Virus record (IMG/VR): IMGVR_UViG_3300029908_000004 | Location: 124,001 to 188,000 of that record | Reading direction: 5' to 3' (one strand) | DNA: 64,000 bases | In this document: positions 8,986 through 26,389 of the stretch, one piece after another | Numbering within the stretch: the stretch's first letter is position 1 | Layout of the letters: every line of letters begins with the position of its first letter | Position numbers and translations under genes: made by a program | The notes under the pieces: generated by a model | Seen by the model: the letters and a program-made list of their open reading frames with translations, nothing else | What the model was told of the DNA's origin: nothing | Database searches by the model: none

Positions 8986-9064
8986 CGAGGTTAGACAGAT
9001 TATAAAAGTTTCTGGGATGCAAACGTTGTGGGATGATATTACCAAATCGTGTAATACAGGATAA
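8943..9064 (+). pseudogene. Displaced duplicate of the endolysin 3' end
   Basis: FQITGRFPEDAPDNEVRQIIKVSGMQTLW aligns without gaps to endolysin FQLANIGPVDAPDDELRKIIATGGVQAVW. Both copies begin at ATTTCCAG (8156-8163 and 8943-8950). Confidence 0.75.
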
Positions 9065-9150
9065 AGAAAGTAGAAACTACAAACAAACACTATTGAATAG
9101 TGTATAATGTAATTAAGTCTTTCTTAATAGGAAGACTAGGAGATAAGATC

Positions 9151-9510
9151 ATGTCGTTCTGGGATAAAGTTGTTGCATTTTTCAAAACAAATTATGCCAA
9201 AGCAAGCGCTGGATTTGTAAGTATGTTCGGCAAAGACGCGGCAGAGGAATTTGCGCATGGCGCAGAAGCTCTACTAAAGACCGGTTTAGGAATTATTGCG
9301 ACAGATGCTGTTATGGCATCCTCTTCACTAGTACGCAATCCTAATGGTTCACCAGCAACATCAACAGATAAAAGAAATGCTGCTTTCCAGAAGATAGCTG
9401 TTGATGCAAAATCTCAAGGAATAAATGTTACCTCTTCTATAGCAAACCTATTGATAGAATTAGCTGTACAAAAAGTGGTAGCAAATAACGTTATTTCAAA
9501 CATAAAGTAA
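9151..9510 (+). CDS. Lysis-cassette-associated hypothetical protein (holin-like candidate)
   Basis: AGGAGA RBS favours ATG 9151 over the track start 9100. Amphipathic 119-aa protein; its function is inferred from context only. Confidence 0.45.
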   Translation: MSFWDKVVAFFKTNYAKASAGFVSMFGKDAAEEFAHGAEALLKTGLGIIATDAVMASSSLVRNPNGSPATSTDKRNAAFQKIAVDAKSQGINVTSSIANLLIELAVQKVVANNVISNIK

Positions 9511-9523
9511 CTAATCTAATCTC

Positions 9524-9555
9524 AAATTAGGAGGTATTTAGGTACCTCCTACTTT
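9524..9555 (+). terminator. Intergenic hairpin, terminator-like
   Basis: TAGGAGGTA-TTTAGG-TACCTCCTA followed by CTTT. Confidence 0.55.
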
Positions 9556-9601
9556 GTGATAAAGATGAAAATTCAAGCGGCCCTAGGAGGGTCGGTTCTA
9601 G

Positions 9602-10174
9602 ATGAATAAAACACTTATAGCTATAGTTTTAGGCTTAGCCATGATTACTACAGCTTGTACAACCTCAATGATTAGCACAATCTTGGGTTATGTAAATACG
9701 TTCCTACCTATAGCTGAAACTATTACTGGTCTTGTTATGGCTACAGAAAACCCAACTTCAGTGGCTTCTATTCAGTCTGTTGAACAGAAGATTAACGCTG
9801 ATCTTCAAGAGATTCAGTTGTTAGGTGCTGGTTATTCAACAGCTAATGCTACTACCACGGATCAGAAGATTTTAGCTGTAGCTAAAGATATCCAGATTAA
9901 TATAAATGGAATCTTAACCTCAACTAACGTTGTTAATCCAACAACAAAGCTAGAAGTAGAAGCATTTGTTTTACTTGGTGATGATCTTGTGAATGACATC
10001 ATCAATTCTTTGCCAGTTTCTAATTCTACTGTATCTGCTTCTCAGGTTCAATTCAGGACTAGTACAGCAGTTAGTTCCTACAAGAAACGTTATAACAAAT
10101 TAATCCGCACTAAGAGCGGAGACGCACGAGTAGATGCCGTGCTATCAAGCAGACATAAACTTGTAACTTGGTAA
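9602..10174 (+). CDS. Putative lipoprotein (spanin-like candidate)
   Basis: MNKTLIAIVLGLAMITTA|C: basic N-terminus, hydrophobic core and an imperfect lipobox at Cys19; helical body. Confidence 0.55.
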   Translation: MNKTLIAIVLGLAMITTACTTSMISTILGYVNTFLPIAETITGLVMATENPTSVASIQSVEQKINADLQEIQLLGAGYSTANATTTDQKILAVAKDIQININGILTSTNVVNPTTKLEVEAFVLLGDDLVNDIINSLPVSNSTVSASQVQFRTSTAVSSYKKRYNKLIRTKSGDARVDAVLSSRHKLVTW

Positions 10175-10177
10175 ATA

Positions 10178-10212
10178 AATAGACCGTAACCCTAATAAGG
10201 TTACGGTCTATT
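10178..10212. repeat. Perfect 14-bp inverted repeat (intergenic hairpin)
   Basis: AATAGACCGTAACC-CTAATAA-GGTTACGGTCTATT, with no U-tract, directly before the next RBS. Confidence 0.8.
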
Positions 10213-10219
10213 AAAGGAA

Positions 10220-11098
10220 ATGTCAATGAGCTTTCTAAAACTGTCACCCGCCGGTCGTCGTTACGGGCGTTATCCTGATAACCCGTTTTCCCCAGCTAAA
10301 ACACTACTTAAAATAACAGCTCCATCTAATTTAGTATTACCACCAACTGCTACTACTTCTCAATGGATGGGCCCAATTCGTGATCAAGCACAAGAGGGTT
10401 CCTGCACGGGGCAATTGAAAGCTGAATACCGTGATTGGATGTACCGTAAGTTGTATATGTTTGAGAAAGATAAAACAATAGCTACAGCGGACTTTATGTC
10501 TTCAGCAGCTTTTGCTTATCAGACAAACCTTGCGGCTGATGGTGATATTGGACAGGATGCGGGATCAACAATCCACACAACGTTTAAAACTTTAAATAAG
10601 TTTGGTGTATGTCTAGCTCCACAAGAACCATATCTTGGAACAGATTATATGTCTGCCCCTACTCAACAAGAATATGCTGAAGCTCTTATCTATAAAGGAG
10701 GACCATATCATTCATTACCAACATTAACAGATGTTAAATTCTCAATTTCTTCTGGCTATGCCGTTGGTATAGGAATTAATGTGTATTCTTCTTTTGAAGA
10801 AACCCAAATACAGACTACTGGGTTTATGCCAATGCCGGCACCTGGCGAGAGTTTATTAGGTGGTCATGCACAACTAGTTTTAGACTATAATGACACAATT
10901 GCTTTCCCAGATGAAACCACTGGTGGTGTATTTATCCAGAATTCATGGGGCAGTTCATGGGGTATTTCAGCACAAGGCCGCACTGACGGCGGTTGTTATT
11001 GGATGCCTTATGCTTTCTTTAATTATCAAGACCCAAGTGGTAATGGATCGGGAGTCTCTGATATGTGGATGATGCATGAGGGCTCAATTTGGCAGTAA
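10220..11098 (+). CDS. Papain-family (C1A) cysteine peptidase
   Basis: RDQAQEGSCTG (Q56, C62), GGHA (H216) and IQNSWG (N241): a complete catalytic set. Confidence 0.88.
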   Translation: MSMSFLKLSPAGRRYGRYPDNPFSPAKTLLKITAPSNLVLPPTATTSQWMGPIRDQAQEGSCTGQLKAEYRDWMYRKLYMFEKDKTIATADFMSSAAFAYQTNLAADGDIGQDAGSTIHTTFKTLNKFGVCLAPQEPYLGTDYMSAPTQQEYAEALIYKGGPYHSLPTLTDVKFSISSGYAVGIGINVYSSFEETQIQTTGFMPMPAPGESLLGGHAQLVLDYNDTIAFPDETTGGVFIQNSWGSSWGISAQGRTDGGCYWMPYAFFNYQDPSGNGSGVSDMWMMHEGSIWQ

Positions 11099-11112
11099 AA
11101 TAAGTTAATTTT

Positions 11113-11138
11113 TGAGAGGATGCCATAACATCCTCTCA
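11113..11138. repeat. 10-bp intergenic hairpin
   Basis: TGAGAGGATG-CCATAA-CATCCTCTCA. Confidence 0.7.
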
Positions 11139-11151
11139 TTCTGAGGTTCTA

Positions 11152-11799
11152 ATGTATTATCCTGGCGATTCTTACACATTCACTCTATTTATAACAACTT
11201 CTACCGGTGTAACTCCAAGCGTAACGGCCAATCCAATGATACAGATAATAAATGCTGCTACTGGTACCTCTGTGCTAGGAACCGCTGGTGCAATGACTTT
11301 AATACCTAGTACCACCTGTGTATATAAGTATACGTGGGTTATATCTTCCTCTGCGACAGCAGGGGAATATGTAGCTGTAGCCTCTTATGCAGCTAATGGA
11401 AATACGTTCTCAGGTTATCCATTTGAGACTGTTTCCATAGGGGATTCCCGGATTACTGGAATAGTGGCATTAAATAATACAGTAGCTTTAAACGCTACTG
11501 TTGCTAAAGATGCTACTGTTGCCCACTTTAGTGATTTGGCTAATATAAACCCAACTTCCAATCCAACGGTAATGGCTATAAAGGCTAAAACAGATCTAAT
11601 ACCAGCGATTCCTGCTGCACAATCTGACGTATTATCAGTACAGACAGTAGTAGATTACATCGAATCTATAGTGGCTGCTGATATGTCTATTGATAAAACT
11701 ACTAATCCAGTAGTTATGACATTAACTTATGAAGGTAACACTATAGCTATCTATAACATAGTTGATGACTCAACTACTTCTGGAAGAATACAAACCTAA
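11152..11799 (+). CDS. Putative virion structural protein (N-terminal Ig-like beta-sandwich)
   Basis: 215 aa, T/A/V-rich and beta-type; translationally coupled to the fibre gene. Confidence 0.55.
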   Translation: MYYPGDSYTFTLFITTSTGVTPSVTANPMIQIINAATGTSVLGTAGAMTLIPSTTCVYKYTWVISSSATAGEYVAVASYAANGNTFSGYPFETVSIGDSRITGIVALNNTVALNATVAKDATVAHFSDLANINPTSNPTVMAIKAKTDLIPAIPAAQSDVLSVQTVVDYIESIVAADMSIDKTTNPVVMTLTYEGNTIAIYNIVDDSTTSGRIQT

Positions 11800-14700
11800 T
11801 GACCCGGTTGATTGACCCTTCACAATATTTCACTAGATACCAATCAGATGCACGTTACTTGGGCAGGTCACAACCTGCCCCACCACCTATTGGGCTATCT
11901 ATGATATCCACAGCCCTATCTGCTACTCCTGGCTATTCCTCTGTAGTGATTGAGTTGATTGATCCCTCTATTCCGTTTTGGGCGGATACAGGTGGTCCTT
12001 ATGTGTATTATTATATGTTTGATTGTACACCTACGATAGCCGGTGTGGCACAAGCAACAAATACAATAACTTTACCATATTCTTCTTCTTGTATTTACAC
12101 CTTACCTGCGTTAATATCTGGTGCAAATTACTCTATATCTGCTAGAACTGTAGATTATACCGGACAGCCAGGAACAGAGAGTACAGCAGTAGAAATAACA
12201 ACAACAACAAATACTTCTACTCCTACAGCTATAACTATTACTGCTGCCCCATGTATTGGTGGTGCGCAGATAGTTCTTAGTGCTCTCAATACTGATCCAG
12301 ATTTTAGTCAATATGAACTCTATAGAGGAAATGGTTATGTAAGCTCTCCAGTATCTTGGGGAGTCGCTCCCATTATTGTAGCTACATTTACTAACGTTAT
12401 GATACCTAATGGGGTGTTTATCGACCATTCGATACCTGCTACTTCTACTGATTATTATTACTATATAGTTGAAGTAAATCTGAGTGGCAACACCACAGTC
12501 ACGCCAATTGTAGGACCATTAAGCCTAGTTGGTACTAGTGTAGCTCCTCCACCTACACCAAGTTTGGTAACAGCTTCTGGAACAGTAAATTCAGACGGTT
12601 CAATAATTATCTCCTTTCAATCGTTAACATTAACAACAGCCCCAACAGTTACATCCTATAATATCTATCGTAGAATTACTGGAACTGCTCAGTGGCTATC
12701 ATTAGTTAATTTACCAACAACGATGGAAGTAAACTCTACTACTATCACTTATATAGATACCTACACTATTATAGGAATGAACTATACTTATGGGGTAACC
12801 TCTGTAGACTCATACGGCGATGAAAGTAGTATGGACACAGATCATTTAATTATGGTGACCTCAACGGTTACAACAACCATAGCAGCTCCAAGCGATGTTG
12901 TATTAACTGGGGTACAAGGTGGGGTAAACGTATCTTGGCTTATTACAAGAGGAGCTGTTGGTTATGAGATATGCTATAGATTTGCGCAAGTTGGATCATC
13001 AGATTTAACTTCGTGGAGTGACCCAATAAATGTACAATCTAATTCCTATACAATTTTTGGTCTGGAATACCCAGAATCTCCAGTTGGCCCGCCAACAAGA
13101 GATGTATTAGCTAATAGTTTTGAGGTGAGCCTCCGTTCATATAATTCGATAATGGATTATTCTCCGTACTCTTACTTAATAGCAACATATCCAGATTTAA
13201 ATAATTACTTTCCGGCTGATACTTCGTTACCACCAGCTCCTATTAAAGTTACGCCAGTCATAAGTAACGCAGCTTCTATTACGCTTACTTGGACAGCTCC
13301 TGTTACTAATAGTTTAGCTGGATATCAGATAGAGCAACAATCTGTTTACGATGATACACCTAGCTCTTGGTCTATATTAGCACTTATAAACGACCCAACT
13401 GCTGGGACTAAGTCTTTTATTGCTAATGGTTTAGAGCCGTATGCTTTTACTAACACTTCTTATATATTTAGGGTGAGAAGTGTAGACACAAGTGGTAATT
13501 TGTCTTCACCAAATCTAGTGTTCAACCCTGGGTTTGAAGATGTACCAACCACCTCTCCTTTTGGTATCCCTTTCTGGTCTTATATTGGTGACGCTCCATC
13601 TATTATAACTACTGATACCAGAAATAATTCTCTTCGAGCAATGAAGCAAGATGGTACTACACAGCTATCACAATCAATAGAGGTGATTGGCGGTTTAGTT
13701 TATACCGCCTCTTGCTTTGTTACTAGTGACCCAGCTATTAATGGGTCCCCTAATCCAAACACTTCTGTCCAAATGCAGATAACGTTTTCTAATACATTAG
13801 GGTTATCAGAAACTTATAATAGTAATAGGATCACAACGAATATAGGTTATCAAAGATTAGTTGTTACCGCTACAGCTCCTATCGCAGCTACCATAGCTAA
13901 AGTTACTCTTCTTAATGACCCAACAAATACAGCACAAACAGCCATATGGGATGATGCACAAGTTGAACAATGTCCTTTCGCTACTATTTATGCTGATGGT
14001 AAAACGGAACAAGTAAATGCTGTTGAGACTAGTGGACCACAACCTTATCTTGTAAATGGGTTACCACTTGTGTTATCTATTGCTGGGTCTTTGGGGGCTA
14101 TTAATTTATCATGGATTAACCCATCTAGAGATTTTAGTGGTTACTATGATTACATAAACGGTGCGTTTGAGATATGGAGAATGGTAACTGTCTCTGAACA
14201 ATCAAATATGCCAGTATCCACTAGTTATATAAAGATAGCAGAGGTACCCTCTTTTGTGTCTGCCAGCGGTATAACTAGCTACAATAGTTATTCTGATCTA
14301 CAACCGGAAGAAAACAATAATATTACTGCTTCCTATGAATTACGTGGAATAGATAGATTCGGTAATGAAGGAAATCAGGTTCTAGCCGGTCCTTTATCTG
14401 CTACATCACAGACTCCTAATGATATACAGATAGTGACAGACATCCACGTACCACCACCGACTCCTATATTGGTTGGCAGTGGTTGTGGGGCGGTAGCAAA
14501 TTCAGATGGTAGTATCTCTGTGTCTTGGAATGGGATCACCCCCTTAGATTGTGTAACTCTAGGTGGTTATAACTTATGGAGGATGATAATCCCGTCTGGT
14601 ACAACACCAACCCCATTATGGAATTCGTTATTAGCAACAATTTCTATAGGACCTTCTACTGGTGGGGATATAGTAACATTTATAGATACTAGTACTAACC

Positions 14701-16490
14701 CAGGAGCGTTATATTGGTATAATGTTTCATCATTCGATAGGGTGGGAAATCAATCTCCCCCTAGCTCTACATATTTTACCTGTACCTCTGCTAATTATTC
14801 TCTTCCAGAACCGGTGCCATCAGGCAGTGTGATTGGGACAGGGACTATGGGGGCGATAGTTTTAACATGGTCCCCTTCTCCAAGCAATATTAACCAATAT
14901 AAAGTATATTGGTCGAACAATTATGGAACTTCTTTTACTTCATTTACAGTTTCTGGAACTACAGCTACAGTCGTGTTAACTAGTGGAGACCCAGCAGCGT
15001 TATTAACAACTGATTTTTCTGCGCATATCACAGCTCTTTCTATCAGCCCTAATTCATCTACTGGGTTATACGTAGAGTCTGCTCCAGTTAGTATGAATAC
15101 GCCTCCTGATCTGACTGGATACATGCCACAGACGTCAGGTACCCCGGCTCCACCAGCTAGTATAACAGCCACACCACAGACGTCAACAGATATAACTCTA
15201 TCTTGGCCTGCTTCTACTTCCACAGATATAAATTATTATATAATTGAAAGCCAATCAACAAATAATAACACTATGGTATCTTCTCCTTGGTGTTATATAG
15301 GGACGGTACCAGCTCCTTCTACAGGATACAGGGTATCTGGGCTACAATCTAGTACGATAAGCCAATTATTATGGACATTTAGAATTTGGTCAGTAAATAA
15401 TACTAGTGTAGTGTCTGCTACTCCTGCGGTATCAAGTCCAGTACCTGTATTAATAGATACTACCCCTCCTGCTATACCGGTAGGTCTAAGTGGGACATTC
15501 CTGAATAGTGGATCTACAGCTACTGCTACTATTTGTTGGACTCCAAATATAGAGCCGGATTTCGACCATTACCTATTACAGTACCAAGCTAGTAGTTTAT
15601 CTGGTACACCAACATCTATAAATGTTCCTGGTATTACACCAACTACTACTATAACTGGATTACCACAATCTATTAGTTATAATTTTATGGTAGCCGCAGG
15701 GGATACTCTTGGTAACACTAGTGCTTTCTGTTCTCCTCTAGTTATAACTTCAACAACCGGTAGTGGCACAGTACCAACTGCTCCAACGGTTTCTGAAACG
15801 TTTACCGCCCCTTATTCAGGTATTTTAACCATTACGTATACCCCTCCTTCTAATTTCACGTGCTATTCGATTTATAGAGCAACGACTAGTTCGCAAGGAT
15901 CTTTATTAGGCACCTGTACTACTAGTACATACACTGATTTCGTTATGTCGTATTCTAATATAACTTATTACTACTGTGTTACAGCTACGAACAGTAGTGG
16001 TCTTTCAAGTGTGATTTCAAATATTGTATCTATAACTTATACCGGAACTGGAAGCAACGGGGCTTGCCCGGCAGAAAATATGTGGGTTACTCAGGATAAG
16101 CAAGCAAAGCAAGTTGTAGCTGGGGATTTATTAGATATTCTGCTGAATAACGATGTATCAAGCAAAGGGCTAGTGATTTCCAATTCTCATACTTACGCAG
16201 CTTGTGTAGAGCTGAAAGCGGATAATGGAGCCACTGTAATAGTTTCTAGGAATACGCCGATGGTATTAAAGGATAATACACAAAGGTATGCTTCAGAAAT
16301 GCAGCTACAGCTAGTAGCAACTGATATAGGAAACGGGATTGAATGGTCACCAGTCACTGTTTACGATGCTGGAATTCGTAGGGTTTGTCATATATACCTA
16401 GGAGGAAAGATTTTTGCTGCTGGATCCTCAAAAGATAAGAGGGTATACACACATAACTCCCTTGCTTATGGACCGATTAGGACAAAATAA
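11799..16490 (+). CDS. Large fibronectin-III repeat fibre protein with a CBM-like domain and a C-terminal Hint domain
   Basis: About 10 FN3-type repeats (e.g. ITLTWTAP...AGYQIE...YIFRVRSVDTSGNLS). NLVFNPGFED...W...LSQSI...YTASCFV is CBM4/9-like. Ends in a Hint-like domain. Confidence 0.8.
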   Translation: MTRLIDPSQYFTRYQSDARYLGRSQPAPPPIGLSMISTALSATPGYSSVVIELIDPSIPFWADTGGPYVYYYMFDCTPTIAGVAQATNTITLPYSSSCIYTLPALISGANYSISARTVDYTGQPGTESTAVEITTTTNTSTPTAITITAAPCIGGAQIVLSALNTDPDFSQYELYRGNGYVSSPVSWGVAPIIVATFTNVMIPNGVFIDHSIPATSTDYYYYIVEVNLSGNTTVTPIVGPLSLVGTSVAPPPTPSLVTASGTVNSDGSIIISFQSLTLTTAPTVTSYNIYRRITGTAQWLSLVNLPTTMEVNSTTITYIDTYTIIGMNYTYGVTSVDSYGDESSMDTDHLIMVTSTVTTTIAAPSDVVLTGVQGGVNVSWLITRGAVGYEICYRFAQVGSSDLTSWSDPINVQSNSYTIFGLEYPESPVGPPTRDVLANSFEVSLRSYNSIMDYSPYSYLIATYPDLNNYFPADTSLPPAPIKVTPVISNAASITLTWTAPVTNSLAGYQIEQQSVYDDTPSSWSILALINDPTAGTKSFIANGLEPYAFTNTSYIFRVRSVDTSGNLSSPNLVFNPGFEDVPTTSPFGIPFWSYIGDAPSIITTDTRNNSLRAMKQDGTTQLSQSIEVIGGLVYTASCFVTSDPAINGSPNPNTSVQMQITFSNTLGLSETYNSNRITTNIGYQRLVVTATAPIAATIAKVTLLNDPTNTAQTAIWDDAQVEQCPFATIYADGKTEQVNAVETSGPQPYLVNGLPLVLSIAGSLGAINLSWINPSRDFSGYYDYINGAFEIWRMVTVSEQSNMPVSTSYIKIAEVPSFVSASGITSYNSYSDLQPEENNNITASYELRGIDRFGNEGNQVLAGPLSATSQTPNDIQIVTDIHVPPPTPILVGSGCGAVANSDGSISVSWNGITPLDCVTLGGYNLWRMIIPSGTTPTPLWNSLLATISIGPSTGGDIVTFIDTSTNPGALYWYNVSSFDRVGNQSPPSSTYFTCTSANYSLPEPVPSGSVIGTGTMGAIVLTWSPSPSNINQYKVYWSNNYGTSFTSFTVSGTTATVVLTSGDPAALLTTDFSAHITALSISPNSSTGLYVESAPVSMNTPPDLTGYMPQTSGTPAPPASITATPQTSTDITLSWPASTSTDINYYIIESQSTNNNTMVSSPWCYIGTVPAPSTGYRVSGLQSSTISQLLWTFRIWSVNNTSVVSATPAVSSPVPVLIDTTPPAIPVGLSGTFLNSGSTATATICWTPNIEPDFDHYLLQYQASSLSGTPTSINVPGITPTTTITGLPQSISYNFMVAAGDTLGNTSAFCSPLVITSTTGSGTVPTAPTVSETFTAPYSGILTITYTPPSNFTCYSIYRATTSSQGSLLGTCTTSTYTDFVMSYSNITYYYCVTATNSSGLSSVISNIVSITYTGTGSNGACPAENMWVTQDKQAKQVVAGDLLDILLNNDVSSKGLVISNSHTYAACVELKADNGATVIVSRNTPMVLKDNTQRYASEMQLQLVATDIGNGIEWSPVTVYDAGIRRVCHIYLGGKIFAAGSSKDKRVYTHNSLAYGPIRTK
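16065..16457 (+). other. Hint (intein-like) domain, 131 aa
   Basis: Begins at Cys (CPAENMWV...AKQVVAGD), block-B-like VIVSRNTPM, block F RVCHIYL, and ends YTHN followed by Ser. Confidence 0.72.
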
Positions 16491-16503
16491 TCAATCATTT
16501 ACC

Positions 16504-16510
16504 TATACTA
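16504..16510 (+). promoter_or_regulatory. TATACTA -10-like element
   Basis: In the 48-nt gap before 16539; one of four intergenic copies. Confidence 0.35.
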
Positions 16511-16538
16511 TGAAGTAGTATGGAGAGGATCCCAATAA

Positions 16539-17096
16539 ATGGGGCGTGTAAACCGCTTACGCTACATAGAATTCAGATTGGTTGACTTATCTAGCAACCC
16601 AATTACAGGGAGGGTTTTGTCCCAATTACAGGTATTCTTTACAAGAAACGCGGTGGTTTGCACAGATCCTTTATCTTTGGTGGAATTAGGTAGTGGTAGG
16701 TATATATTAGAGTACACTCCTTCTGCTGCGGGTCACGATTATCTAGAAATGTATGACCCACCTTCTCAGATTAGAATCGAAGACTCAGAAGATATAGATG
16801 ACGCTAATACATTCTTTGATTTGAGTGCTACCGTAGGTGTTAGTCAGGATTATGGCAGTATTGGTAGATATAAAGTCATTGTATCTAACCCGAGTTCTTA
16901 CGTACTTTACGTGTTTTATACATCTGATTGGGACGCTGGAAAGACTGCCACAAACTTTGCATTGGCAGCTACGAATATAGACAGCTCTGGTAACTGGCTG
17001 TCCACCCCTATAACTTTAGTTCATGGCACTTATAACTTAGTTTTATTTGGGGCAGACGGAACAATAATAGTAGTAGCTGCCAGCTTAGTCGTTTAA
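16539..17096 (+). CDS. Hypothetical virion protein (two small beta domains)
   Basis: 185 aa with a GGAG RBS; VELGSGRYILEYTP is Ig-like. Confidence 0.6.
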   Translation: MGRVNRLRYIEFRLVDLSSNPITGRVLSQLQVFFTRNAVVCTDPLSLVELGSGRYILEYTPSAAGHDYLEMYDPPSQIRIEDSEDIDDANTFFDLSATVGVSQDYGSIGRYKVIVSNPSSYVLYVFYTSDWDAGKTATNFALAATNIDSSGNWLSTPITLVHGTYNLVLFGADGTIIVVAASLVV

Positions 17097-17107
17097 TTGG
17101 AGCAATA

Positions 17108-17881
17108 ATGAGAAATTTGATTTTGCATGTAACACTACCAAAAGGACTATCGTTAACTGATGGCAGAATATTGGAACAAGACGTGACTTACGATTTGGTA
17201 TCACAAATCGAGCCATATTTTTGTTCTATAGATCAAGTACGTCTAGCTGGTGGGCAAATACTTCGTAAGCTATCGGACTTAACAATAGCTTGTCAGATTT
17301 ATCAATCTAGTGAAGAAGCACGTCTTATTTCACCTATGCCCTTTTCTAGCTCTGTAATAAACAATACTCCTTATAACAATATTACACATCATAGGTTAAT
17401 TGGGTGTAGGAATCAGTGGGTAACTGCCGCTGCTGCAAGGGATTTAATCTTAGGTCAGGGTACACTATTAGGTGGTCCACAATCCCACGTATTAGCAAAT
17501 TTCTCTGTTGAGAGATCAAGAGGATTCCAGACTGAGGGTACCCCAGCCAAACTTAAGGAGTTGGGTGATTCAATCAAATTCTATGAAGTAGCGTTAAGAA
17601 GTTCTGGGTATACACTTCCCGGTGGAAGACCAAGATCAGGTATGGCAGCAAAAGGTGTATATGACTGGACAGAAAGAACACCAGCAAGAACTTGGACGTC
17701 AACTGGTCTAGGTGCAAACGCTACATCTATGGATTTCGGTTCACCAACTGGTGGTCGTGGAAAACCAACAAAGTTTTTTGCTTCTCCATTCTATTCTCCA
17801 CCTCTTATTAATCTAAGATCTGGTATTTTCCAAGGAACTTATCCATTAGTTATTCAAACAGCATATCCATTATCAGTATAA
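17108..17881 (+). CDS. Putative head-completion/neck protein
   Basis: 257 aa, located before the neck and terminator genes; the call is positional. Confidence 0.45.
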   Translation: MRNLILHVTLPKGLSLTDGRILEQDVTYDLVSQIEPYFCSIDQVRLAGGQILRKLSDLTIACQIYQSSEEARLISPMPFSSSVINNTPYNNITHHRLIGCRNQWVTAAAARDLILGQGTLLGGPQSHVLANFSVERSRGFQTEGTPAKLKELGDSIKFYEVALRSSGYTLPGGRPRSGMAAKGVYDWTERTPARTWTSTGLGANATSMDFGSPTGGRGKPTKFFASPFYSPPLINLRSGIFQGTYPLVIQTAYPLSV

Positions 17882-17904
17882 GTATTTAATAAGGAATTAA
17901 TATA

Positions 17905-18072
17905 ATGACTGACCCCACAACAAAGTATCCAGTCCTTTCTAATGTTAACTTGTCAGAACAATTATGGGGTGAGATTAGAGCAATAGAGACCCCAGTCAAA
18001 AATTATTCCCTATGGAATGAGATTAAAGGAAGAGAAATAACAGGCAAGAATTATTCCTTTATGGAGAAGTAA
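17905..18072 (+). CDS. 55-aa micro-ORF with a tandem 16-aa repeat (not in ORF track)
   Basis: AAGGA RBS and ATG 17905. It fills the gap exactly, with the stop abutting ATG 18073. Repeat units are LWGEIRAIETPVKNYS and LWNEIKGREITGKNYS. Confidence 0.6.
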   Translation: MTDPTTKYPVLSNVNLSEQLWGEIRAIETPVKNYSLWNEIKGREITGKNYSFMEK

Positions 18073-18618
18073 ATGCAATATTTTCCAGATACACCAAATA
18101 TCGATTTACGTGAAGAAATGGACGCTTTGTTGTTCGGGCGTTCGGATGTAAATTCTATTGGTAAACGTGTCATTCTAAGAAGAATAACAAACGATAAATG
18201 TGTTTGTTGGGATGAAACTTCTGGTGGTCCAAATAGAATGTGTGTTTATTGTGGTGGTGAGGGATATCTATGGAGAGAAACTTATGAAACTATGTGTGTG
18301 GTCAGAGGCATAGCCCCTGTGTATAAACCCGGAGTTCTGGCTACTGGTTCGTACCCTATGGCCCAGTATGGTTATACAGATCAGAACACTGGCACAGCGT
18401 TCGCTAGGTTTGATTGTTATATAAATTATGAGAGATATACCCTTCCAGAACACCTATCCTACGACAAGATGTATGAACTAAAAGTCAACGAAGATGGTAG
18501 TTTATTTCATCCGTTAACACGAACAATAAAGTGGAAAGTGTTGACCGTAGTGCCCGTTCATGGTGATTTCTCAAGGATCGAATACTTTGAGTTGGCACTT
18601 GAAAAAGAAAACGTATAA
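18073..18618 (+). CDS. Putative neck/head-closure protein with a zinc-binding motif
   Basis: KCVCWD...MCVYCGGEGY; positioned before the tail terminator. Confidence 0.55.
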   Translation: MQYFPDTPNIDLREEMDALLFGRSDVNSIGKRVILRRITNDKCVCWDETSGGPNRMCVYCGGEGYLWRETYETMCVVRGIAPVYKPGVLATGSYPMAQYGYTDQNTGTAFARFDCYINYERYTLPEHLSYDKMYELKVNEDGSLFHPLTRTIKWKVLTVVPVHGDFSRIEYFELALEKENV

Positions 18619-18663
18619 ATAAGGTTCGCATGGGTATTTAAATCTATGAGTTAGAGTCAGAAC

Positions 18664-18678
18664 TGCTATACTAATTAG
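18664..18678 (+). promoter_or_regulatory. Extended -10-like element TGcTATACTAATTAG
   Basis: Intergenic, about 40 nt before ATG 18707. Confidence 0.45.
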
Positions 18679-18706
18679 GAATAGTTGGAGAGATATCGGG
18701 AGTTAT

Positions 18707-19420
18707 ATGGATCGCTACTTTAAAAGAGGGTATGACAAGAAGGAACCTAGAACAAATAGACATCTTTTAGAGCCACCCATAAGATCTACTTTACCAGCGG
18801 TCGATATACCAGGATTTTTTGATGCGGTGGAGGCTGCTTTACAGATTCATATTAAATCTTATGGCACTCCAGAGGGGACAACCCCAAAGTTTGAGCATGA
18901 ATTCCCTAGGGAACGAATGACAAAAACGGATGATCCATTCGATGTAATTACTTTTAGAGTGGTTAGTAGTTCAATGGCTCCAACAATGAACGATGGATCA
19001 GCACCACGGACTCCAGAAGTGAGACAAATAATGCCTCACCCAAAGCAAGCGGGCTACAACCTCGTCGTCTATGGTTGGTGGGAATTAGTTATTGTAGAGT
19101 TTAGCATTTGGTCAAGATCAAATTTACGAGCTGATTTATTAACTAATTGGTTTCATCGATTCATGGTTAAATATGCTACCGAACTGGATTATTTCCTTGC
19201 TCGTGGCGTACAGCATTTTAGATTCGTCGCACGTGGCGACGACGATTTCGATTCAGAACAGAGACAGGAAATCTACCGTCGTAGATTGAAGTATGAGATC
19301 CGTCTTGAATACCTGGACACACTAATGGAGAAGACGCTTCAGAGTGTTGACTTAATAATTGGGGTTGCAAAGCAGACCGACACGATCGTTATACCAAGTG
19401 ACCCAAACAGCGACAAATAA
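18707..19420 (+). CDS. Putative tail completion/terminator protein
   Basis: 237 aa immediately before the sheath gene; VEFSIWSRSNLRADLLTNWF...RRRLKYEIR. Confidence 0.55.
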   Translation: MDRYFKRGYDKKEPRTNRHLLEPPIRSTLPAVDIPGFFDAVEAALQIHIKSYGTPEGTTPKFEHEFPRERMTKTDDPFDVITFRVVSSSMAPTMNDGSAPRTPEVRQIMPHPKQAGYNLVVYGWWELVIVEFSIWSRSNLRADLLTNWFHRFMVKYATELDYFLARGVQHFRFVARGDDDFDSEQRQEIYRRRLKYEIRLEYLDTLMEKTLQSVDLIIGVAKQTDTIVIPSDPNSDK

Positions 19421-19455: not shown

Positions 19456-21525
19456 ATGTCTAGTTATCCAAATCTACCTGGAATTCAGGTCTACACGATC
19501 GATCGTGGCCTTGCTTCACGCACGGTTCCCAAAGATAAGTCAGTATTGATTTGTGGTACTGCCGGTCAAGGTCCTCAAAACGACCCGTTCCAGGTAACCG
19601 ATCGTGCCGCAGCAGCAAGCACCTTCGGTCTTAACGGCTCACTTATCAAGGCAATGGAAGAAGTTGCTGCTAATTGTGACAACGTCATCCTATATCGTAT
19701 AGGAACAGGACCAACATACCTAAATGGTGTTGGAGCAGCACAAATCGGACCAATCACAGCTGTCAGTCAGTCAGTTGGTGGCACTTGTGTGTATACTGGA
19801 ACATTTACTGGCGCAGCAACAAACGCATTGTCTGGTGGGTCGATTACTGTATCTGGGATGACTCCTTCAGCACTTAATGGAACGTTCACCTGCACTGCTT
19901 CATCAGCTGTAGCACTAACACTATCTAATGCAGCCGTTACAACTGCAGCCTCAGGTCTTACTGGAATGGCCACTTATTCAGGATTCAATATTGAATGTGG
20001 TTCAACGAATACAGATAATTCTACTGATTATCAAATCTGGTATAAAGCTGGGATTCTGTATGTGTGGTTTTACGGAGACCTAGTATTTTCAAATGATGCT
20101 GCTAATGGCTACTCAATAAATACTGGTGACATAACAATCACTGGCAATATCCTAAATTTGGGTCTAGAACTCGGAACTGGCACTAGCGCCCAAGCAGTAA
20201 CCACAGCACAAGCCCTAACATTAACGCAAGCTGGGGCACTTACTGGTTCAACTGCTGCACCAGCACCAGTTTTTGTACTTGGTGCTGATGGTACATCCCT
20301 TACACTACGTCAGACATATGTTGCTCTGGCACAGGCTTTGGATTTACTAATGGATTTCTCAGTAGATTCTGTCTATTGCCCAGATGCTTTTGTTGATGCC
20401 CCAAACGTTGCTTATAGAATGACTGCTGCTGGTAACACTAGCGTTCTAGATTGGTTGAAGACAACGTCTTCTTCAACTGGTGTTAAGACATATCAGTGGG
20501 CGAGCGAATCAGTTGATAGTAACGGAACTGTCGCTACACCTATGGCAGGTAGCATAACTACTGCAGCTGCTCGTGTAGCTGCTGGTTGGCATGAAGTTCA
20601 TTTTGAGTACTTACTAGCTAACTTCTGTTATGTCCAAGAAACAATTGGTCAGTCTGGAACTTGTATTGGCTTTATTGGTACTACAGGACCAAATAGCTTC
20701 TCACTTATAGACACCCGTAATTGGATAGGCTATCTACCTCAGTATAGCCCAGTTGTTACGAATGAAGTTATCACAGCAGGTAATGGTATATTAGGTATAC
20801 CTACCATAGTTGGAACTGTTCCGTCTAATCTAAGTGTTCTTTGTACGGATAGTTCTATTGGGCGTGCTGGTGGATTATTCGCAACCACTGTTGGTGAGTA
20901 TGACGGCATAGTTGTTCAGGATGCTAATGGTAATAATGTTGACATCGGTGCTTATATCCACGTATTCGCAGATCAAGGTGTAATTAGCAATGGATACGCT
21001 ACAAACTACTGTACTAATCTAGCGGGTTATGTGGCAGGTATCGCTTCAGCATTAGATGAGAAATCAAACCTGACTAACAAACCGGTGAACGCAGTTCAGC
21101 TATGGAAAGCTTCCTTCGCACAGATGGATTCTCTAACTTGGGCTGGTGTTAACGTATTAAGGTTCAAGGGAAATGGAATTCTGCCAGTAATGCTTCATGG
21201 CTTTACTATTGCTACGGATCTTAGCGATTATCATAACCTGCTTCGCCAGCGTATTAAGGGCTTGGTTGTTGATACAATTCGTGTTACAGCCGATCCTTAT
21301 ATCGGTGAGTCTTCAACAGATGGTCTACAGTTGACAGCAATGCAAACAGCATTGGATTCAGCATTGACAAACCTACAGAAGCGCGGATATATCAGTCGTT
21401 ATAGCTTTGTGGTAAGTGTAACACAAGCAGAACAACGTATTGGACACGCCAATATCTACGTCAACTTCTACCCAGCAGACGAGCTGGTTCAGCTAACAGC
21501 AACTGTTGGTATTAGCCGTTCCTAA
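19456..21525 (+). CDS. Contractile tail sheath protein
   Basis: N-terminal YPNLPGIQVYTIDRGL...SVLICGTA..GP and C-terminal sheath domain LLRQRIKGLVVDTIR...YIGE...IYVNFYPADELVQL. Confidence 0.88.
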   Translation: MSSYPNLPGIQVYTIDRGLASRTVPKDKSVLICGTAGQGPQNDPFQVTDRAAAASTFGLNGSLIKAMEEVAANCDNVILYRIGTGPTYLNGVGAAQIGPITAVSQSVGGTCVYTGTFTGAATNALSGGSITVSGMTPSALNGTFTCTASSAVALTLSNAAVTTAASGLTGMATYSGFNIECGSTNTDNSTDYQIWYKAGILYVWFYGDLVFSNDAANGYSINTGDITITGNILNLGLELGTGTSAQAVTTAQALTLTQAGALTGSTAAPAPVFVLGADGTSLTLRQTYVALAQALDLLMDFSVDSVYCPDAFVDAPNVAYRMTAAGNTSVLDWLKTTSSSTGVKTYQWASESVDSNGTVATPMAGSITTAAARVAAGWHEVHFEYLLANFCYVQETIGQSGTCIGFIGTTGPNSFSLIDTRNWIGYLPQYSPVVTNEVITAGNGILGIPTIVGTVPSNLSVLCTDSSIGRAGGLFATTVGEYDGIVVQDANGNNVDIGAYIHVFADQGVISNGYATNYCTNLAGYVAGIASALDEKSNLTNKPVNAVQLWKASFAQMDSLTWAGVNVLRFKGNGILPVMLHGFTIATDLSDYHNLLRQRIKGLVVDTIRVTADPYIGESSTDGLQLTAMQTALDSALTNLQKRGYISRYSFVVSVTQAEQRIGHANIYVNFYPADELVQLTATVGISRS

Positions 21526-22870: not shown

Positions 22871-23920
22871 ATGCCTATGCCCGATGCATTTTCCTCTTAT
22901 ACCTCTTACACTTCTTGGTCAACCAGCGGTTATTCTGTTGGTAATCAAACAAGTATTAGTAATCTACAGTATTCTTCAGTACTGTCTGGCGGCGCTTCGC
23001 CTGTTATAAGCCAGACTGCCCCTTCTAATATAACCCCACAAATTACACAAGGAAACTACTATACCAACCCTGTGGTACAAGCTCTTCGTCTTAATAGCGG
23101 TGGACCAACTTGTAGTGTGAATGATATAGACGGAAACGTGGTAGTTCCTTCCACTTATGGTTATATAAATATGGGATCTGGCACCCAAATGACCTTTGAC
23201 CCCACTACTAAGGCAGGTCAGATAAACCCAGCGGTATCCCCATTAAAATCAAACTCTCCAAATCCTTATAGCGGGGTTGTCTCTTATACAGGTTCTGATG
23301 TTAAGATAATGATAGGAATTAGTAATCTAGCATTCCAGCAACAAGGGAGCGCCGCACCTAAATACGCGAAGCAGTTGATAGAGTGTACCACCTTATCTAT
23401 TTCTATACATAGAGAAAAAGCTCCAGTAAGAGCACTAGGATATATAAATCCTAAAGGGTTTACTCGTGGTACTAGGACTATAGCTGGGACGATGGTAATG
23501 ACACAATTTACTGTAGAAGTCCTAATGAAGTTCTTACAGTCAGGCGCATACAATGGTAATGACCTTTCAAAAGATAGTACCTACCTAAAAGTAGATCAGT
23601 TACCCCCATTTGATATGTCTATTTTCTTTAGTAATGAACAAGGTTACGCTTCTTCAAGAAGTTTATTAGGTGTTCAATTTGTAACGGATGGTGTGGTATA
23701 CTCTATACAGGATATGTTATCTGAACAAACCGTATCGTTTATGTGTGAGGATTTTACACCCCTGCTGCCTGTGAATATGAGCAGTGTATTTAATATGCCA
23801 AAGCATGGCAATCCAAACACTTCTTCACAACCAACACCTATGGGTAAGGTACAAAAGTATGGAAATGTTAATGGCAACCCTTCACAAGTTATCCCTATTA
23901 ATAGCACCCCGGTAATGTAA
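22871..23920 (+). CDS. Tail tube paralogue 2 with an S/T/P-rich N-terminal extension
   Basis: SYTGSDVK...TTLSISIHREKAPVRALGYINPKGFTRGTRTIAGTMV...QLPPFDMSI aligns to the 22097 tube motifs. Confidence 0.75.
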   Translation: MPMPDAFSSYTSYTSWSTSGYSVGNQTSISNLQYSSVLSGGASPVISQTAPSNITPQITQGNYYTNPVVQALRLNSGGPTCSVNDIDGNVVVPSTYGYINMGSGTQMTFDPTTKAGQINPAVSPLKSNSPNPYSGVVSYTGSDVKIMIGISNLAFQQQGSAAPKYAKQLIECTTLSISIHREKAPVRALGYINPKGFTRGTRTIAGTMVMTQFTVEVLMKFLQSGAYNGNDLSKDSTYLKVDQLPPFDMSIFFSNEQGYASSRSLLGVQFVTDGVVYSIQDMLSEQTVSFMCEDFTPLLPVNMSSVFNMPKHGNPNTSSQPTPMGKVQKYGNVNGNPSQVIPINSTPVM

Positions 23921-25867: not shown

Positions 25868-26389
25868 ATGATTATTTATCAAGCGACATGGCCTGACGGC
25901 TATACTGTCAAGTGGCGCAACCTAACTTGGGCAGAATATCGTAGAATAGAACCATCATACCTAGGAGCCTCTTCTAGGTTTTCTTATCCTATGGGGGCTT
26001 ATTTAGATGTATACAAACTAGTGATGCTAGATGGGCCACTCCCACAATTTGTGCCAGCGGGAATAGTAGCATACGTTGCTATACAACAGCTAAGTACTAA
26101 CCCATTCAATGGTACCTATGATGATATAAAAGGTCAATTATATTTATCTAGACAGAGATTAGAATCTAGTTATCTAGAAACAGCGAAGTGCTTGATAGCT
26201 GCAGCATTTAAATATAGATTCGAAGAAATGGAAGATTGGGATCCAATAACTTTCTTTGATATGTTAGCAAGAGCAGAGAAGGTATTGGGCCGGCTAGCAG
26301 AACCAAATAACCCTAATGAAGTTAAAGCCCCATCAATTCCAGAAGATGTTAAAAGAGAAGCATTACATAGAAATAGAAGGAAAAAGTAA
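25868..26389 (+). CDS. Putative tail assembly chaperone 2
   Basis: 173 aa; stop overlaps the ATG of the giant gene (TAATG). Confidence 0.5.
   Translation: MIIYQATWPDGYTVKWRNLTWAEYRRIEPSYLGASSRFSYPMGAYLDVYKLVMLDGPLPQFVPAGIVAYVAIQQLSTNPFNGTYDDIKGQLYLSRQRLESSYLETAKCLIAAAFKYRFEEMEDWDPITFFDMLARAEKVLGRLAEPNNPNEVKAPSIPEDVKREALHRNRRKK

What the first reader, a model, noticed from the sequence alone, without database searches (positions are those of the whole stretch)
16065..16490. C-terminal Hint domain on a giant FN3 fibre, followed by only a 10-aa tail
Seen: Cys start, His-Asn end and a +1 Ser nucleophile, then SLAYGPIRTK-stop; there is no endonuclease insert. The usual block-B His appears replaced (SRNTP versus TxxHP). 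Established: Hint domains self-cleave or splice (inteins, BILs, Hedgehog). Inference: autoprocessing of a virion fibre, by release of a folding domain, splicing on of a short peptide, or thioester-mediated attachment to another molecule.
Basis: partly seen in the sequence, partly recalled or inferred. Interest (0 to 1): 0.6.

Follow-up and report, generated by a model that had tools for sequence, protein, structure and literature searches.

The report
Self-processing Hint domain capping phage fibres
The last 141 residues of a 1563-residue phage fibre protein form a small intein/Hedgehog-type (Hint) self-cleaving domain from a large, unnamed family that caps phage tail-fibre proteins, lacks the usual catalytic histidine, and ends in a tiny lysine-bearing tail, which points to an unstudied way of maturing or ligating fibre tips.

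Summary
Window 16065-16457 encodes a 131-residue Hint-fold domain, Cys1423 to His1552-Asn1553. A 10-residue tail (SLAYGPIRTK) and the stop codon follow. The domain ends the 1563-aa FN3 protein encoded at 11799-16490.

Pfam, NCBIfam and PHROGs do not detect it. A family profile hits inteins in the PDB (gp41-1, E 3.8e-4). An AlphaFold model (pLDDT 88) matches Hedgehog Hint and mini-inteins at Z 15-18, from intein residue 1 to the terminal Asn.

The domain belongs to at least 380 sequence clusters. It sits almost always at the extreme C-terminus of phage fibre or host-specificity proteins, behind a poly-Gly linker.

Across 137 aligned members:
- Cys1 is present in 134 and His-Asn in 137.
- Block-B His is replaced by Thr in 135.
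- Block-F Asp is replaced by Arg or His.
- The +1 residue is not a conserved nucleophile (C/S/T in 27).
- The tail is usually 3-7 residues and carries a Lys in 133, often as a terminal Lys-Pro.

My best reading is a BIL-like self-removing module that couples a Gly-Cys thioester with Asn cyclisation. The tail Lys is the likely acceptor.

No processing has been shown experimentally. I rate it a new variant of a known kind.

The parts
11799..16490 (+). Gene for a 1563-aa fibre-like virion protein. It holds arrays of FN3/Ig-like repeats, an unassigned middle domain (about residues 560-760), a linker, the Hint module and a tail.
   Evidence: ORF list and translation. Pfam fn3, E 6.5e-20, four stretches. 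It lies between head genes (major-head-protein-like 5101-6420, peptidase 10220-11098) and the tail sheath gene 19456-21525. A syntenic orthologue, P0007, occurs in a 230-kb phage contig.
16041..16064 (+). Short Gly/Ser/Thr linker (TGTGSNGA) before the N-terminal junction. It is the family's poly-Gly linker in a reduced form. The -1 residue is Ala1422.
   Evidence: Family columns -8..-1 are mostly Gly, with a median of 7 Gly in the 12 residues before Cys1.
16065..16067 (+). Cys1423, which is Hint residue 1 (block A nucleophile).
   Evidence: Cys in 134 of 137 family members. Structural alignments start here at intein residue 1.
16065..16457 (+). Hint-fold domain of 131 residues, Cys1423 to Asn1553. 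It is mini-intein sized with no endonuclease insert.
   Evidence: AlphaFold2 pLDDT 88. VIA-align Z 17.7/17.5/17.0 to Hedgehog Hint, NpuDnaB and gp41-1. Foldseek E 2e-6. PDB profile hit to the gp41-1 intein, E 3.8e-4.
16203..16205 (+). Cys1469, a family-specific second conserved Cys, 14 residues before block B. Its role is unknown.
   Evidence: Cys in 128 of 137 members. It aligns to a non-conserved Ser of the gp41-1 intein.
16245..16259 (+). Block B equivalent, S1483-R-N-T1486-P1487. Ser occupies B:7 and Thr stands where the canonical His B:10 would be.
   Evidence: S in 125, T in 135 and P in 135 of 137 members. HMM alignments put 'SesT' on gp41-1 'SEEH' and on PhoCDC21 'TPTH'.
16389..16391 (+). 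His1531, at the position of the canonical block-F Asp (F:4).
   Evidence: The family column holds R in 51, H in 43, Y in 10 and K in 9 members. It aligns to the Asp of gp41-1 'LIDIEV'.
16452..16457 (+). His1552-Asn1553, the block G penultimate His and terminal Asn (C-terminal junction).
   Evidence: Invariant in 137 of 137 members. Structural alignments end on the inteins' last Asn.
16458..16490 (+). Ten-residue tail SLAYGPIRTK (Ser1554 = +1, Lys1563 = last residue) followed by the TAA stop.
   Evidence: Sequence. Family tails are 3-7 aa in 121 of 137 members. A Lys is present in 133 of 137, against a background of 2.3-2.7% Lys. It lies among the last two residues in 115, and 65 tails end in 'KP'. 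The closest relatives end in ..TK..VK..GK or ..QK.

Best explanation
The C-terminal 141 residues are a self-processing Hint module of the bacterial-intein-like (BIL) kind. It is made as part of the fibre precursor and removes itself after translation.

Proposed steps, all inferred:
1. Cys1423 attacks the Ala1422-Cys1423 peptide bond (Gly-Cys in most relatives), converting it to a thioester. The flexible Gly-rich linker exposes this bond.
2. The fibre's new C-terminal acyl group is passed to an acceptor. Because the +1 residue is not a conserved nucleophile while a Lys in the mini-tail is nearly universal, the most likely acceptor is the epsilon-amine of the tail Lys. That would give an isopeptide-branched intermediate, as shown for the Tetrahymena BUBL BIL2 domain. 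Water is the fallback acceptor.
3. Asn1553, helped by His1552, cyclises and cuts the Hint domain away from the tail.

The net result would be a mature fibre without the 14-kDa Hint domain, ending at the linker and possibly capped by the short Lys peptide.

Thr1486 stands where His B:10 should be, and Arg/His stands where Asp F:4 should be. The thioester step must therefore be activated in a non-canonical, compensated way.

The family's positions are the end of tail-fibre gene clusters and the gpJ-like position in a siphovirus. These suggest the module sits at the distal, receptor-facing end of fibres. There it would act as a removable pro-domain, a functional analogue of the self-cleaving intramolecular chaperone of tailspikes.
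For: Shown:
- Hint fold with the junction residues in register.
- Profile-level homology to inteins.
- A family of at least 380 clusters at 50% identity, 57 of them at E<=1e-10.
- In 146 of the top 150 hits the domain match ends 12 or fewer residues from the protein's C-terminus.
- Cys1 in 134 of 137, His-Asn in 137 of 137, S..TP in 125-135 of 137. The two junction positions are the most conserved residues of the domain, which is hard to explain without chemistry at both ends.
- Tail Lys in 133 of 137 against about 2.5% background.
- The Hint module is the best conserved part between this protein and its syntenic orthologue (42% identity, with no alignable N-terminal 1100 residues).
- The module is attached to at least 15 unrelated upstream domain types, including FN3, PKD and CBM_4_9-like domains.
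- Relatives lie in tail-fibre clusters of cultured Xanthomonas and Stenotrophomonas phages and at the gpJ position of a siphovirus-type prophage.

Precedents from papers:
- BIL2 splices through a Lys of the C-extein to give an isopeptide (PMC8616854).
- A-type BILs have a C-terminal His-Asn without a +1 nucleophile and cleave at their ends (PMC7765530).
- An intein lacking His B:10 compensates with a Lys (PMC4031507).

Inference: if the fibre were simply released by hydrolysis, nothing would select for an invariant His-Asn and a Lys-bearing tail.
Against: - No experiment shows cleavage for any member. I found no virion proteomics covering a relative.
- Two residues that normally drive the N-S acyl shift are replaced: His B:10, 'the most conserved intein residue', and Asp F:4. 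The thioester step could therefore be slow or absent.
- The tail is modelled at low confidence (pLDDT about 45-52).
- The Lys offset from Asn varies (3 to 6 residues).
- In this protein the tail is longer (10 aa) and the linker less Gly-rich than is typical.
- A biological benefit of capping a fibre with a tetrapeptide is not obvious.
Confidence: 0.55

Rival explanations
1. Thioester-mediated attachment in trans. The Hint domain generates a C-terminal acyl-thioester on the fibre, and an amine or hydroxyl of another molecule captures it. That molecule could be a Lys of a capsid, neck or baseplate protein (covalent anchoring of the fibre) or a host-surface molecule (covalent adsorption). This would be analogous to Hedgehog cholesterol transfer or to BUBL ubiquitin-like conjugation.
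For: - Poly-Gly before Cys1 gives an unhindered, mobile acyl donor.
- BIL2 conjugates its N-extein to Lys residues of several substrates (PMC8616854).
- The Hedgehog Hint domain is the top structural match (Z 17.7).
- In this phage the gene lies between the head and tail modules.
Against: - This reading does not explain the invariant His-Asn or the conserved Lys in a 3-7-residue tail.
- There is no adduct-recognition region such as Hedgehog's sterol-recognition region. The protein ends 10 residues after Asn.
- In relatives the gene position suggests the C-terminus is the distal end, not the virion-attached end.
- A thioester is unlikely to survive storage in a virion.
Confidence: 0.12
2. A catalytically dead Hint-derived knob. 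The fold has been kept as a structural or receptor-binding tip domain that stays on the fibre. Cys1, Cys1469 and His-Asn would be conserved for a disulfide, a metal site or packing rather than for cleavage.
For: - The canonical His B:10, Asp F:4 and His F:13 are all missing.
- A second Cys is conserved in 128 of 137 members and could pair with Cys1.
- Pfam's Hint models do not recognise the family.
Against: - The most conserved residues are exactly the first and last residues of the fold, and a flexible Gly linker precedes residue 1.
- Members lacking the second Cys still keep Cys1 (XacN1, and P0018 module 1).
- A binding tip would be expected to vary with the host, yet the module is conserved across unrelated fibres.
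Confidence: 0.15
3. Classical class-1 intein-type splicing through Ser1554. The 10-residue tail is joined to Ala1422 by a normal peptide bond and the Hint domain is excised.
For: This particular protein has Ser at +1 together with Cys1 and His-Asn. Eleven of 137 relatives also have Ser and 16 have Thr.
Against: - The +1 residue is C/S/T in only 27 of 137 members, never Cys, and Pro in 20.
- The syntenic orthologue has Ala at +1.
- Block-B His and block-F Asp, which promote thioester formation and trans-esterification in class-1 inteins, are absent.
Confidence: 0.08

Closest known systems
A-type bacterial intein-like (BIL) domains (Amitai 2003; Dassa 2004; C. thermocellum BIL, PDB 2lwy)
   Same: - Mini Hint fold (Z 14.6 to 2lwy).
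- Cys at residue 1 and a C-terminal His-Asn.
- No conserved +1 nucleophile.
- Found in variable surface or secreted proteins rather than conserved enzymes.
- No homing endonuclease.
- Known to cleave at their ends (PMC7765530).
   Different: - BILs keep the block-B TxxH; this family has SxxT.
- BILs are usually internal with a real C-terminal flank; this family is terminal with a 3-10-residue Lys tail.
- Poly-Gly precedes residue 1 here.
- The carriers are phage fibre proteins.
- I could not test sequence-level membership, because no BIL profile was available.
BIL2 of the Tetrahymena thermophila BUBL polyubiquitin-like locus (PDB 6tmm/6y75)
   Same: - Hint fold (Foldseek E 4e-6; Z 14.2).
- Cys1 and a terminal Asn.
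- The N-extein ends in Gly.
- A Lys of the C-terminal flank, not a +1 Cys/Ser/Thr, acts as the nucleophile and gives an isopeptide (PMC8616854).
   Different: - BIL2 is flanked by ubiquitin-like domains and uses a catalytic His69 (block B) switched by zinc.
- Here the flank is a fibre on one side and a tetra- to decapeptide on the other, and the His is replaced by Thr.
- A nucleophilic role for the Lys is only inferred here.
Hedgehog/Hog C-terminal autoprocessing domain (PDB 1at0)
   Same: It is the best structural match (Z 17.7, rmsd 1.9 over 128 residues). It is also a C-terminal Hint domain that detaches from the functional N-terminal part through a Gly-Cys thioester.
   Different: - Hedgehog has TxxH, a cholesterol-activating Asp and a sterol-recognition region, and it lacks a terminal His-Asn.
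- This family has His-Asn plus a tail, no adduct-recognition region and no block-B His.
Class-1 mini-inteins (gp41-1, NpuDnaB, PhoCDC21-1)
   Same: They give the only significant sequence-profile hits. The fold aligns in register from residue 1 to the last Asn. The Tko CDC21-1 intein also lacks His B:10 and compensates with a Lys (PMC4031507).
   Different: - Inteins interrupt conserved host proteins and need a +1 Cys/Ser/Thr.
- Here there is no C-extein protein to restore, the +1 residue is variable, and His B:10, Asp F:4 and His F:13 are all replaced.
Intramolecular chaperone auto-cleaving domain of phage tailspikes and fibres (Peptidase_S74)
   Same: Functional analogy only. Both are C-terminal domains of phage fibres or spikes that remove themselves after assembly.
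   Different: The fold and chemistry are unrelated: Peptidase_S74 is a trimeric Ser-Lys dyad protease. There is no Pfam hit here.

Membership tests
Hint (Hedgehog/intein) fold superfamily | Horseshoe-like all-beta Hint fold with the N- and C-terminal junction residues at the ends of the domain | tested here: met
   AlphaFold2 pLDDT 88. The top 30 VIA-align hits are all Hint-fold chains, Z 8-17.7, aligned from residue 1 to the terminal Asn. Foldseek gives 48 hits at E<=1e-3.
Hint (Hedgehog/intein) fold superfamily | Recognition by curated sequence models (Pfam Hint, Hint_2, PT-HINT, Intein_splicing, Vint) | tested here: not met
   No Pfam hit at E<=1 for residues 1400-1563. Only 2 of 137 relatives touch PF01079 and 1 touches PT-HINT, all weakly. 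Genome-wide six-frame searches with PF14890 and PF01079 find nothing.
Class-1 inteins | Nucleophile (Cys/Ser) at residue 1 and His-Asn at the C-terminus | tested here: met
   Cys1423 and His1552-Asn1553. Conserved in 134 of 137 and 137 of 137 members.
Class-1 inteins | Block B Thr-x-x-His (His B:10) | tested here: not met
   The sequence is S-R-N-T-P. Thr occupies the His column in 135 of 137 members. The alignments to gp41-1 and CDC21 inteins agree.
Class-1 inteins | Conserved +1 Cys/Ser/Thr, and a C-extein that completes a host protein | tested here: not met
   Ser is present here, but +1 is C/S/T in only 27 of 137 members. The flank is a 3-10-residue tail that ends the protein.
Class-1 inteins | Block F Asp (F:4) and His (F:13) | tested here: not met
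   The F:4 column holds R51/H43/Y10/K9, and F:13 falls in an insertion of the intein.
A-type BIL domains | Cys1 plus C-terminal His-Asn, without a +1 nucleophile, in non-conserved surface or secreted proteins | tested here: met
   The carriers are variable phage fibre proteins.
A-type BIL domains | A-type BIL sequence motifs, including block B TxxH | tested here: inconclusive
   The block-B His is absent. No BIL-specific profile was available. The only comparison is structural, with 2lwy at Z 14.6.
Hedgehog/Hog autoprocessing domains | Hint domain followed by an adduct (sterol) recognition region, with N-terminal cleavage only and no terminal Asn | tested here: not met
   The protein ends 10 residues after an invariant His-Asn.
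PT-HINT of polymorphic toxins | Hint domain placed just before a C-terminal toxin domain that it releases | tested here: not met
   Nothing but a short tail follows the domain. There is no PT-HINT Pfam hit.
BUBL-type BIL (Lys-directed isopeptide splicing) | A Lys of the C-terminal flank attacks the thioester to form an isopeptide | not testable with these tools
   Only the conserved tail Lys is seen (133 of 137). The chemistry needs mass spectrometry.
Peptidase_S74 intramolecular chaperone | Trimeric C-terminal chaperone domain with a Ser-Lys dyad | tested here: not met
   No Pfam hit, and the fold is Hint.

The most novel reading that the evidence does not exclude
The module is a new mechanistic class of Hint domain that works without the block-B histidine. 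It would act as a Lys-directed protein ligase at the tip of phage receptor-binding fibres. It would either cap the fibre through a Gly-(epsilon)Lys isopeptide, or hold a latent, trigger-dependent thioester that couples the fibre covalently to a virion partner or to the host surface (a 'chemical harpoon' for adsorption).
Probability: 0.15. Interest if true: 0.9.

Novelty: new variant of a known kind. Interest (0 to 1): 0.62.

Why it matters
Hint domains are the chemistry behind inteins, Hedgehog maturation and many protein-engineering tools. Almost all known active ones depend on the block-B histidine.

This is a family of hundreds of sequence clusters that keeps both junction residues invariant yet uniformly replaces that histidine. 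It has no +1 nucleophile and carries a conserved Lys in a 3-7-residue tail.

If the family is active, two things would follow. It would show a second way to activate the N-terminal scissile bond, and it would add a natural case of Lys-directed (isopeptide) splicing. It would also add a second, unrelated self-removing C-terminal module to phage fibre biology, alongside the tailspike intramolecular chaperone.

That matters for annotating and engineering receptor-binding proteins, because the mature tip would differ from the gene product. Cultured Xanthomonas and Stenotrophomonas phages carry the module, so the question can be tested directly.

Tried and rejected
- Pfam, NCBIfam and PHROGs scans of the protein and its C-terminus found only fn3.
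- A single-sequence AlphaFold run failed (pLDDT 39). It was repeated with the family alignment.
- The search for homologous proteins (word search, region 1415-1563) and the search for related loci in viral contigs returned only the protein itself or a 100%-identical contig. This says little, because of the length window and the need for close relatives. The big HMMER search was therefore used once.
I therefore made no systematic scan of bacterial genomes.
- I looked for a Lys depletion that would signal avoidance of competing amines. The FN3 part has 7 Lys in 1402 residues, but many structural proteins of this phage are equally poor in charged residues. The Hint domain itself has 8 Lys in 131 residues, so there is no specific signal.
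- The downstream ORF 16539-17096 shows no similarity to the gene downstream of the LucasX homologue (E 1.7). The equivalent gene in phage RTH11 is annotated as a tail assembly chaperone. The ORF also has no Pfam hit.
- Literature searches for Hint or intein-like domains on phage fibres found nothing relevant. The XacN1 and LucasX papers give no proteomic data on the homologues.
- A mobile homing intein was rejected. There is no endonuclease, no GC anomaly (about 40% throughout), no conserved host protein to restore, and no other intein in the genome.
- A class-3 intein mechanism was rejected because Cys1 is present and F:4 is Arg/His rather than Cys.
- I did not use the reads tools or complex prediction, because no claim here depends on them.
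Full report
WHAT IS THERE

The finding lies at the 3' end of the ORF 11799-16490 (+), which encodes 1563 residues. Pfam recognises only fibronectin type III repeats in this protein (E 6.5e-20, four stretches).

The window is part of a 215-kb virus record that CheckV rates as complete. The gene sits in the structural module. Upstream are a major-head-protein-like gene (5101-6420) and a peptidase-like gene (10220-11098). Downstream are virion structural genes and the tail sheath gene (19456-21525).

- Cys1423: 16065-16067.
- S-R-N-T-P: 16245-16259.
- His1552-Asn1553: 16452-16457.
- Ser1554, then LAYGPIRTK, then TAA: 16458-16490.

The stretch from Cys to Asn is 131 residues, which is mini-intein size.

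IS IT A HINT DOMAIN?

The curated libraries say no:
- Pfam, NCBIfam and PHROGs give nothing for residues 1400-1563.
- Six-frame searches of the whole phage genome with PF14890 and PF01079 are empty.

A single exhaustive HMMER search with residues 1415-1563 found 380 cluster representatives at E<=1e-3, 57 of them at E<=1e-10. I aligned 137 full-length domains as A2. Three results follow from that alignment:
- The A2 profile hits inteins and little else of note in the PDB. The hits are gp41-1 (E 3.8e-4), PhoCDC21-1 (5.8e-3), and NpuDnaB, DnaE and VMA inteins more weakly.
- AlphaFold2 on A2 gives a confident model (pLDDT 88.4, pTM 0.81). A single-sequence run had failed.
- An exhaustive structural comparison returns only Hint-fold chains in the first 30 places. 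The top matches are Hedgehog 1at0 (Z 17.7), NpuDnaB (17.5), gp41-1 (17.0) and NrdJ-1 (16.6). C. thermocellum BIL scores 14.6 and Tetrahymena BIL2 scores 14.2. Model residues 21..151 (Cys1423..Asn1553) align to intein residue 1 through the terminal Asn. Foldseek agrees.

THE FAMILY AND ITS SIGNATURE

In 146 of the 150 best hits, the domain match ends no more than 12 residues before the protein's C-terminus. One exception carries two divergent modules in tandem and one is a spurious repeat protein. Carrier proteins range from 113 to 2587 residues, with a median of 875.

Column statistics over 137 members:
- A Gly-rich linker precedes the domain, with a median of 7 Gly in the 12 residues before residue 1.
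- Cys1 is present in 134.
- A second Cys, Cys1469 here, is present in 128.
- Block B reads S(125)-x-x-T(135)-P(135).
- The block-F Asp column holds Arg 51, His 43, Tyr 10 and Lys 9.
- His-Asn is present in 137 of 137.
- The +1 residue is A22, P20, T16, L15, S11, V11, M10 and others. It is C/S/T in 27 and never Cys.
- Tails are 3-7 residues in 121 members.
- A Lys is present in 133 tails, against 2.3-2.7% Lys in the domain bodies. It lies among the last two residues in 115, and 65 tails end in Lys-Pro.

The HMM alignments to gp41-1 ('SEEH') and PhoCDC21 ('TPTH') put the family's Thr on the inteins' His B:10. They put the Arg/His column on the Asp of 'LIDIEV', which is F:4.

The review literature calls His B:10 the most conserved intein residue. 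It knows only two inteins without it: one is a pseudogene, and the other (Tko CDC21-1) compensates with a Lys (PMC4031507).

The '+1 Ser', by contrast, is incidental. The syntenic orthologue in a related 230-kb phage has Ala at +1.

WHERE THE MODULE OCCURS

Among 50,697 cultured-phage records, three different queries found the same nine phages. All are large (168-385 kb) phages isolated on Xanthomonas or Stenotrophomonas, apart from one isolated on an Erwinia sp..

In those phages and in metagenomic contigs, the carrier gene sits as follows:
- LucasX and RTH11: last in a run of tail-fibre genes. In RTH11 a gene annotated as a tail assembly chaperone follows it.
- PhiXhv-15: after the baseplate and tail-fibre genes.
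- DLP_6: just upstream of the neck genes. The ORF is not annotated there.
- A metagenomic siphovirus-type prophage: the 2587-residue carrier sits after the tape-measure and distal-tail genes, at the lambda gpJ position.
- A 76-kb contig: the carrier has eight PKD domains and a CBM_4_9-like domain directly before the linker.

The 140 residues upstream of the module fall into at least 15 unrelated groups. The module is therefore a portable C-terminal cassette of fibre and host-specificity proteins.

All sources name these proteins 'hypothetical'. BFVD lists the cultured homologues without a name. ESM Atlas shows neighbouring viral clusters of gpJ-like FN3 proteins in which Pfam Hint is sometimes detected. 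Hint domains on phage tail proteins therefore already exist in databases. However, I found no paper that describes or tests them.

HOW IT MOST LIKELY WORKS (INFERENCE)

The two most conserved positions of the domain are its first and last residues, and a flexible Gly linker exposes the first junction. This is the pattern of a domain that reacts at both ends, not of a binding knob.

If the fibre were released by simple hydrolysis of a Cys1 thioester, as in Hedgehog without its sterol, nothing would keep His-Asn invariant or maintain a Lys in a tail of four or five residues. Asn cyclisation matters to the phage only if, at that moment, the tail is attached to something that matters. That is the logic of splicing: the N-terminal part is first transferred onto the C-terminal flank.

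With no +1 nucleophile, there are two documented routes:
- Aminolysis by the flank's alpha-amine after C-terminal cleavage, as in A-type BILs (Dassa 2004 and Aranko 2013, cited).
- Attack by a Lys epsilon-amine of the flank, giving an isopeptide, as in BIL2 of the Tetrahymena BUBL locus (PMC8616854).

The near-universal tail Lys, and the Pro at +1 in 20 members, fit the second route better. A freed tetrapeptide would also diffuse away before it could react.

I therefore propose this sequence: a thioester forms at Ala1422|Cys1423, the acyl group transfers to Lys1563 (or to water), and Asn1553 cyclises. The product is a fibre lacking the Hint domain and possibly carrying a small branched cap.

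An alternative reading is that the Lys, or the Arg/His at F:4, is the compensating catalytic group for the missing His B:10. I cannot separate these roles without coordinates or experiments. The purpose of a removable tip domain (folding aid, masking of the binding tip, or quality control of assembly) is unknown.

RIVALS

- Trans-conjugation to a virion or host molecule is chemically plausible, given the Gly-thioester and the BIL2 precedent. It leaves the His-Asn and the Lys tail unexplained.
- A dead structural knob fits the loss of three canonical catalytic residues and the extra Cys. It does not fit the invariance of the junction residues.
- Classical Ser+1 splicing fits this protein alone, not the family.

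NOVELTY AND VERDICT

The fold and the general idea of Hint autoprocessing are known. What I rate as a new variant of a known kind is the combination of four things:
- A strictly C-terminal position on phage fibres.
- A poly-Gly|Cys junction.
- SxxT in place of TxxH, with Arg/His in place of Asp F:4.
- A Lys-bearing mini-tail.

The family is also invisible to Pfam. I found no experimental evidence of processing for any member. The mechanistic claims are inferences from conservation and precedent.

LIMITS OF THIS WORK

- The big search returned only the best 150 of 380 hits.
- Bacterial genomes were not scanned systematically.
- The reads tools and the complex predictor were not used.

Noticed in passing
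L010:10001-14683 (protein P0018, residues about 1262-1560): A metagenomic fibre protein carries two divergent copies of the module in tandem (...SHN-AIKGPGG-C...HHN-AKDTDPMGGL). The first lacks the second conserved Cys and the second has it. The arrangement looks like the result of a cassette exchange that left an old module downstream.
   Followed up: partly
L003:3-1655 (Stenotrophomonas phage DLP_6, KU682439.2): The Hint-tipped ORF is not annotated in the GenBank record and runs off the record's first base. It lies just upstream of the neck genes, roughly where T4 has its collar and whisker gene.
   Followed up: no
L011:10001-17764: A 2587-aa Hint-tipped protein occupies the gpJ-like position of a siphovirus-type tail module. 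Bacterial translation genes (RF3, ArgRS, RF1) flank it, so the module also occurs in prophages.
   Followed up: no
window 37839-43034 (+): A 1731-aa protein has a C-terminal SLT lytic transglycosylase domain (residues 1614-1706, E 5e-17). Two other giant ORFs lie upstream (26389-31365 and 32914-37839) with no Pfam match.
   Followed up: no
window 5101-6420 and 22871-23920 (+): Two different genes match PHROG 'major head protein' families (phrog_3922 and phrog_9206). The second lies downstream of the sheath gene.
   Followed up: no
window 10220-11098 (+): A papain-like peptidase signal (phrog_16701 at E 2e-9; Pfam Peptidase_C1 at E 0.008, below its cut-off) lies two genes upstream of the fibre gene.
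   Followed up: no
window, many structural ORFs (for example 11799-16490, 50564-52282, 58202-59875): Most virion-module proteins of this phage are very poor in charged residues (Lys 0.5-2%, Asp+Glu 6-8%). The FN3 part of the fibre has 7 Lys in 1402 residues.
   Followed up: partly
ESM Atlas clusters (no coordinates): There are viral clusters of gpJ-like proteins (PF24801 FNIII-A_GpJ, Phage-tail_3) in which Pfam Hint or PT-HINT is detected in 20-35% of members. These may be a sister group of Hint-tipped tail proteins.
   Followed up: no
window 9000-19000: GC content is about 40% across the gene and its neighbours. The one cultured carrier whose GC content I saw, LucasX, is 54.9% GC, and its Xanthomonas host is 64.8%. 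The host of this phage is probably a different, lower-GC lineage.
   Followed up: no
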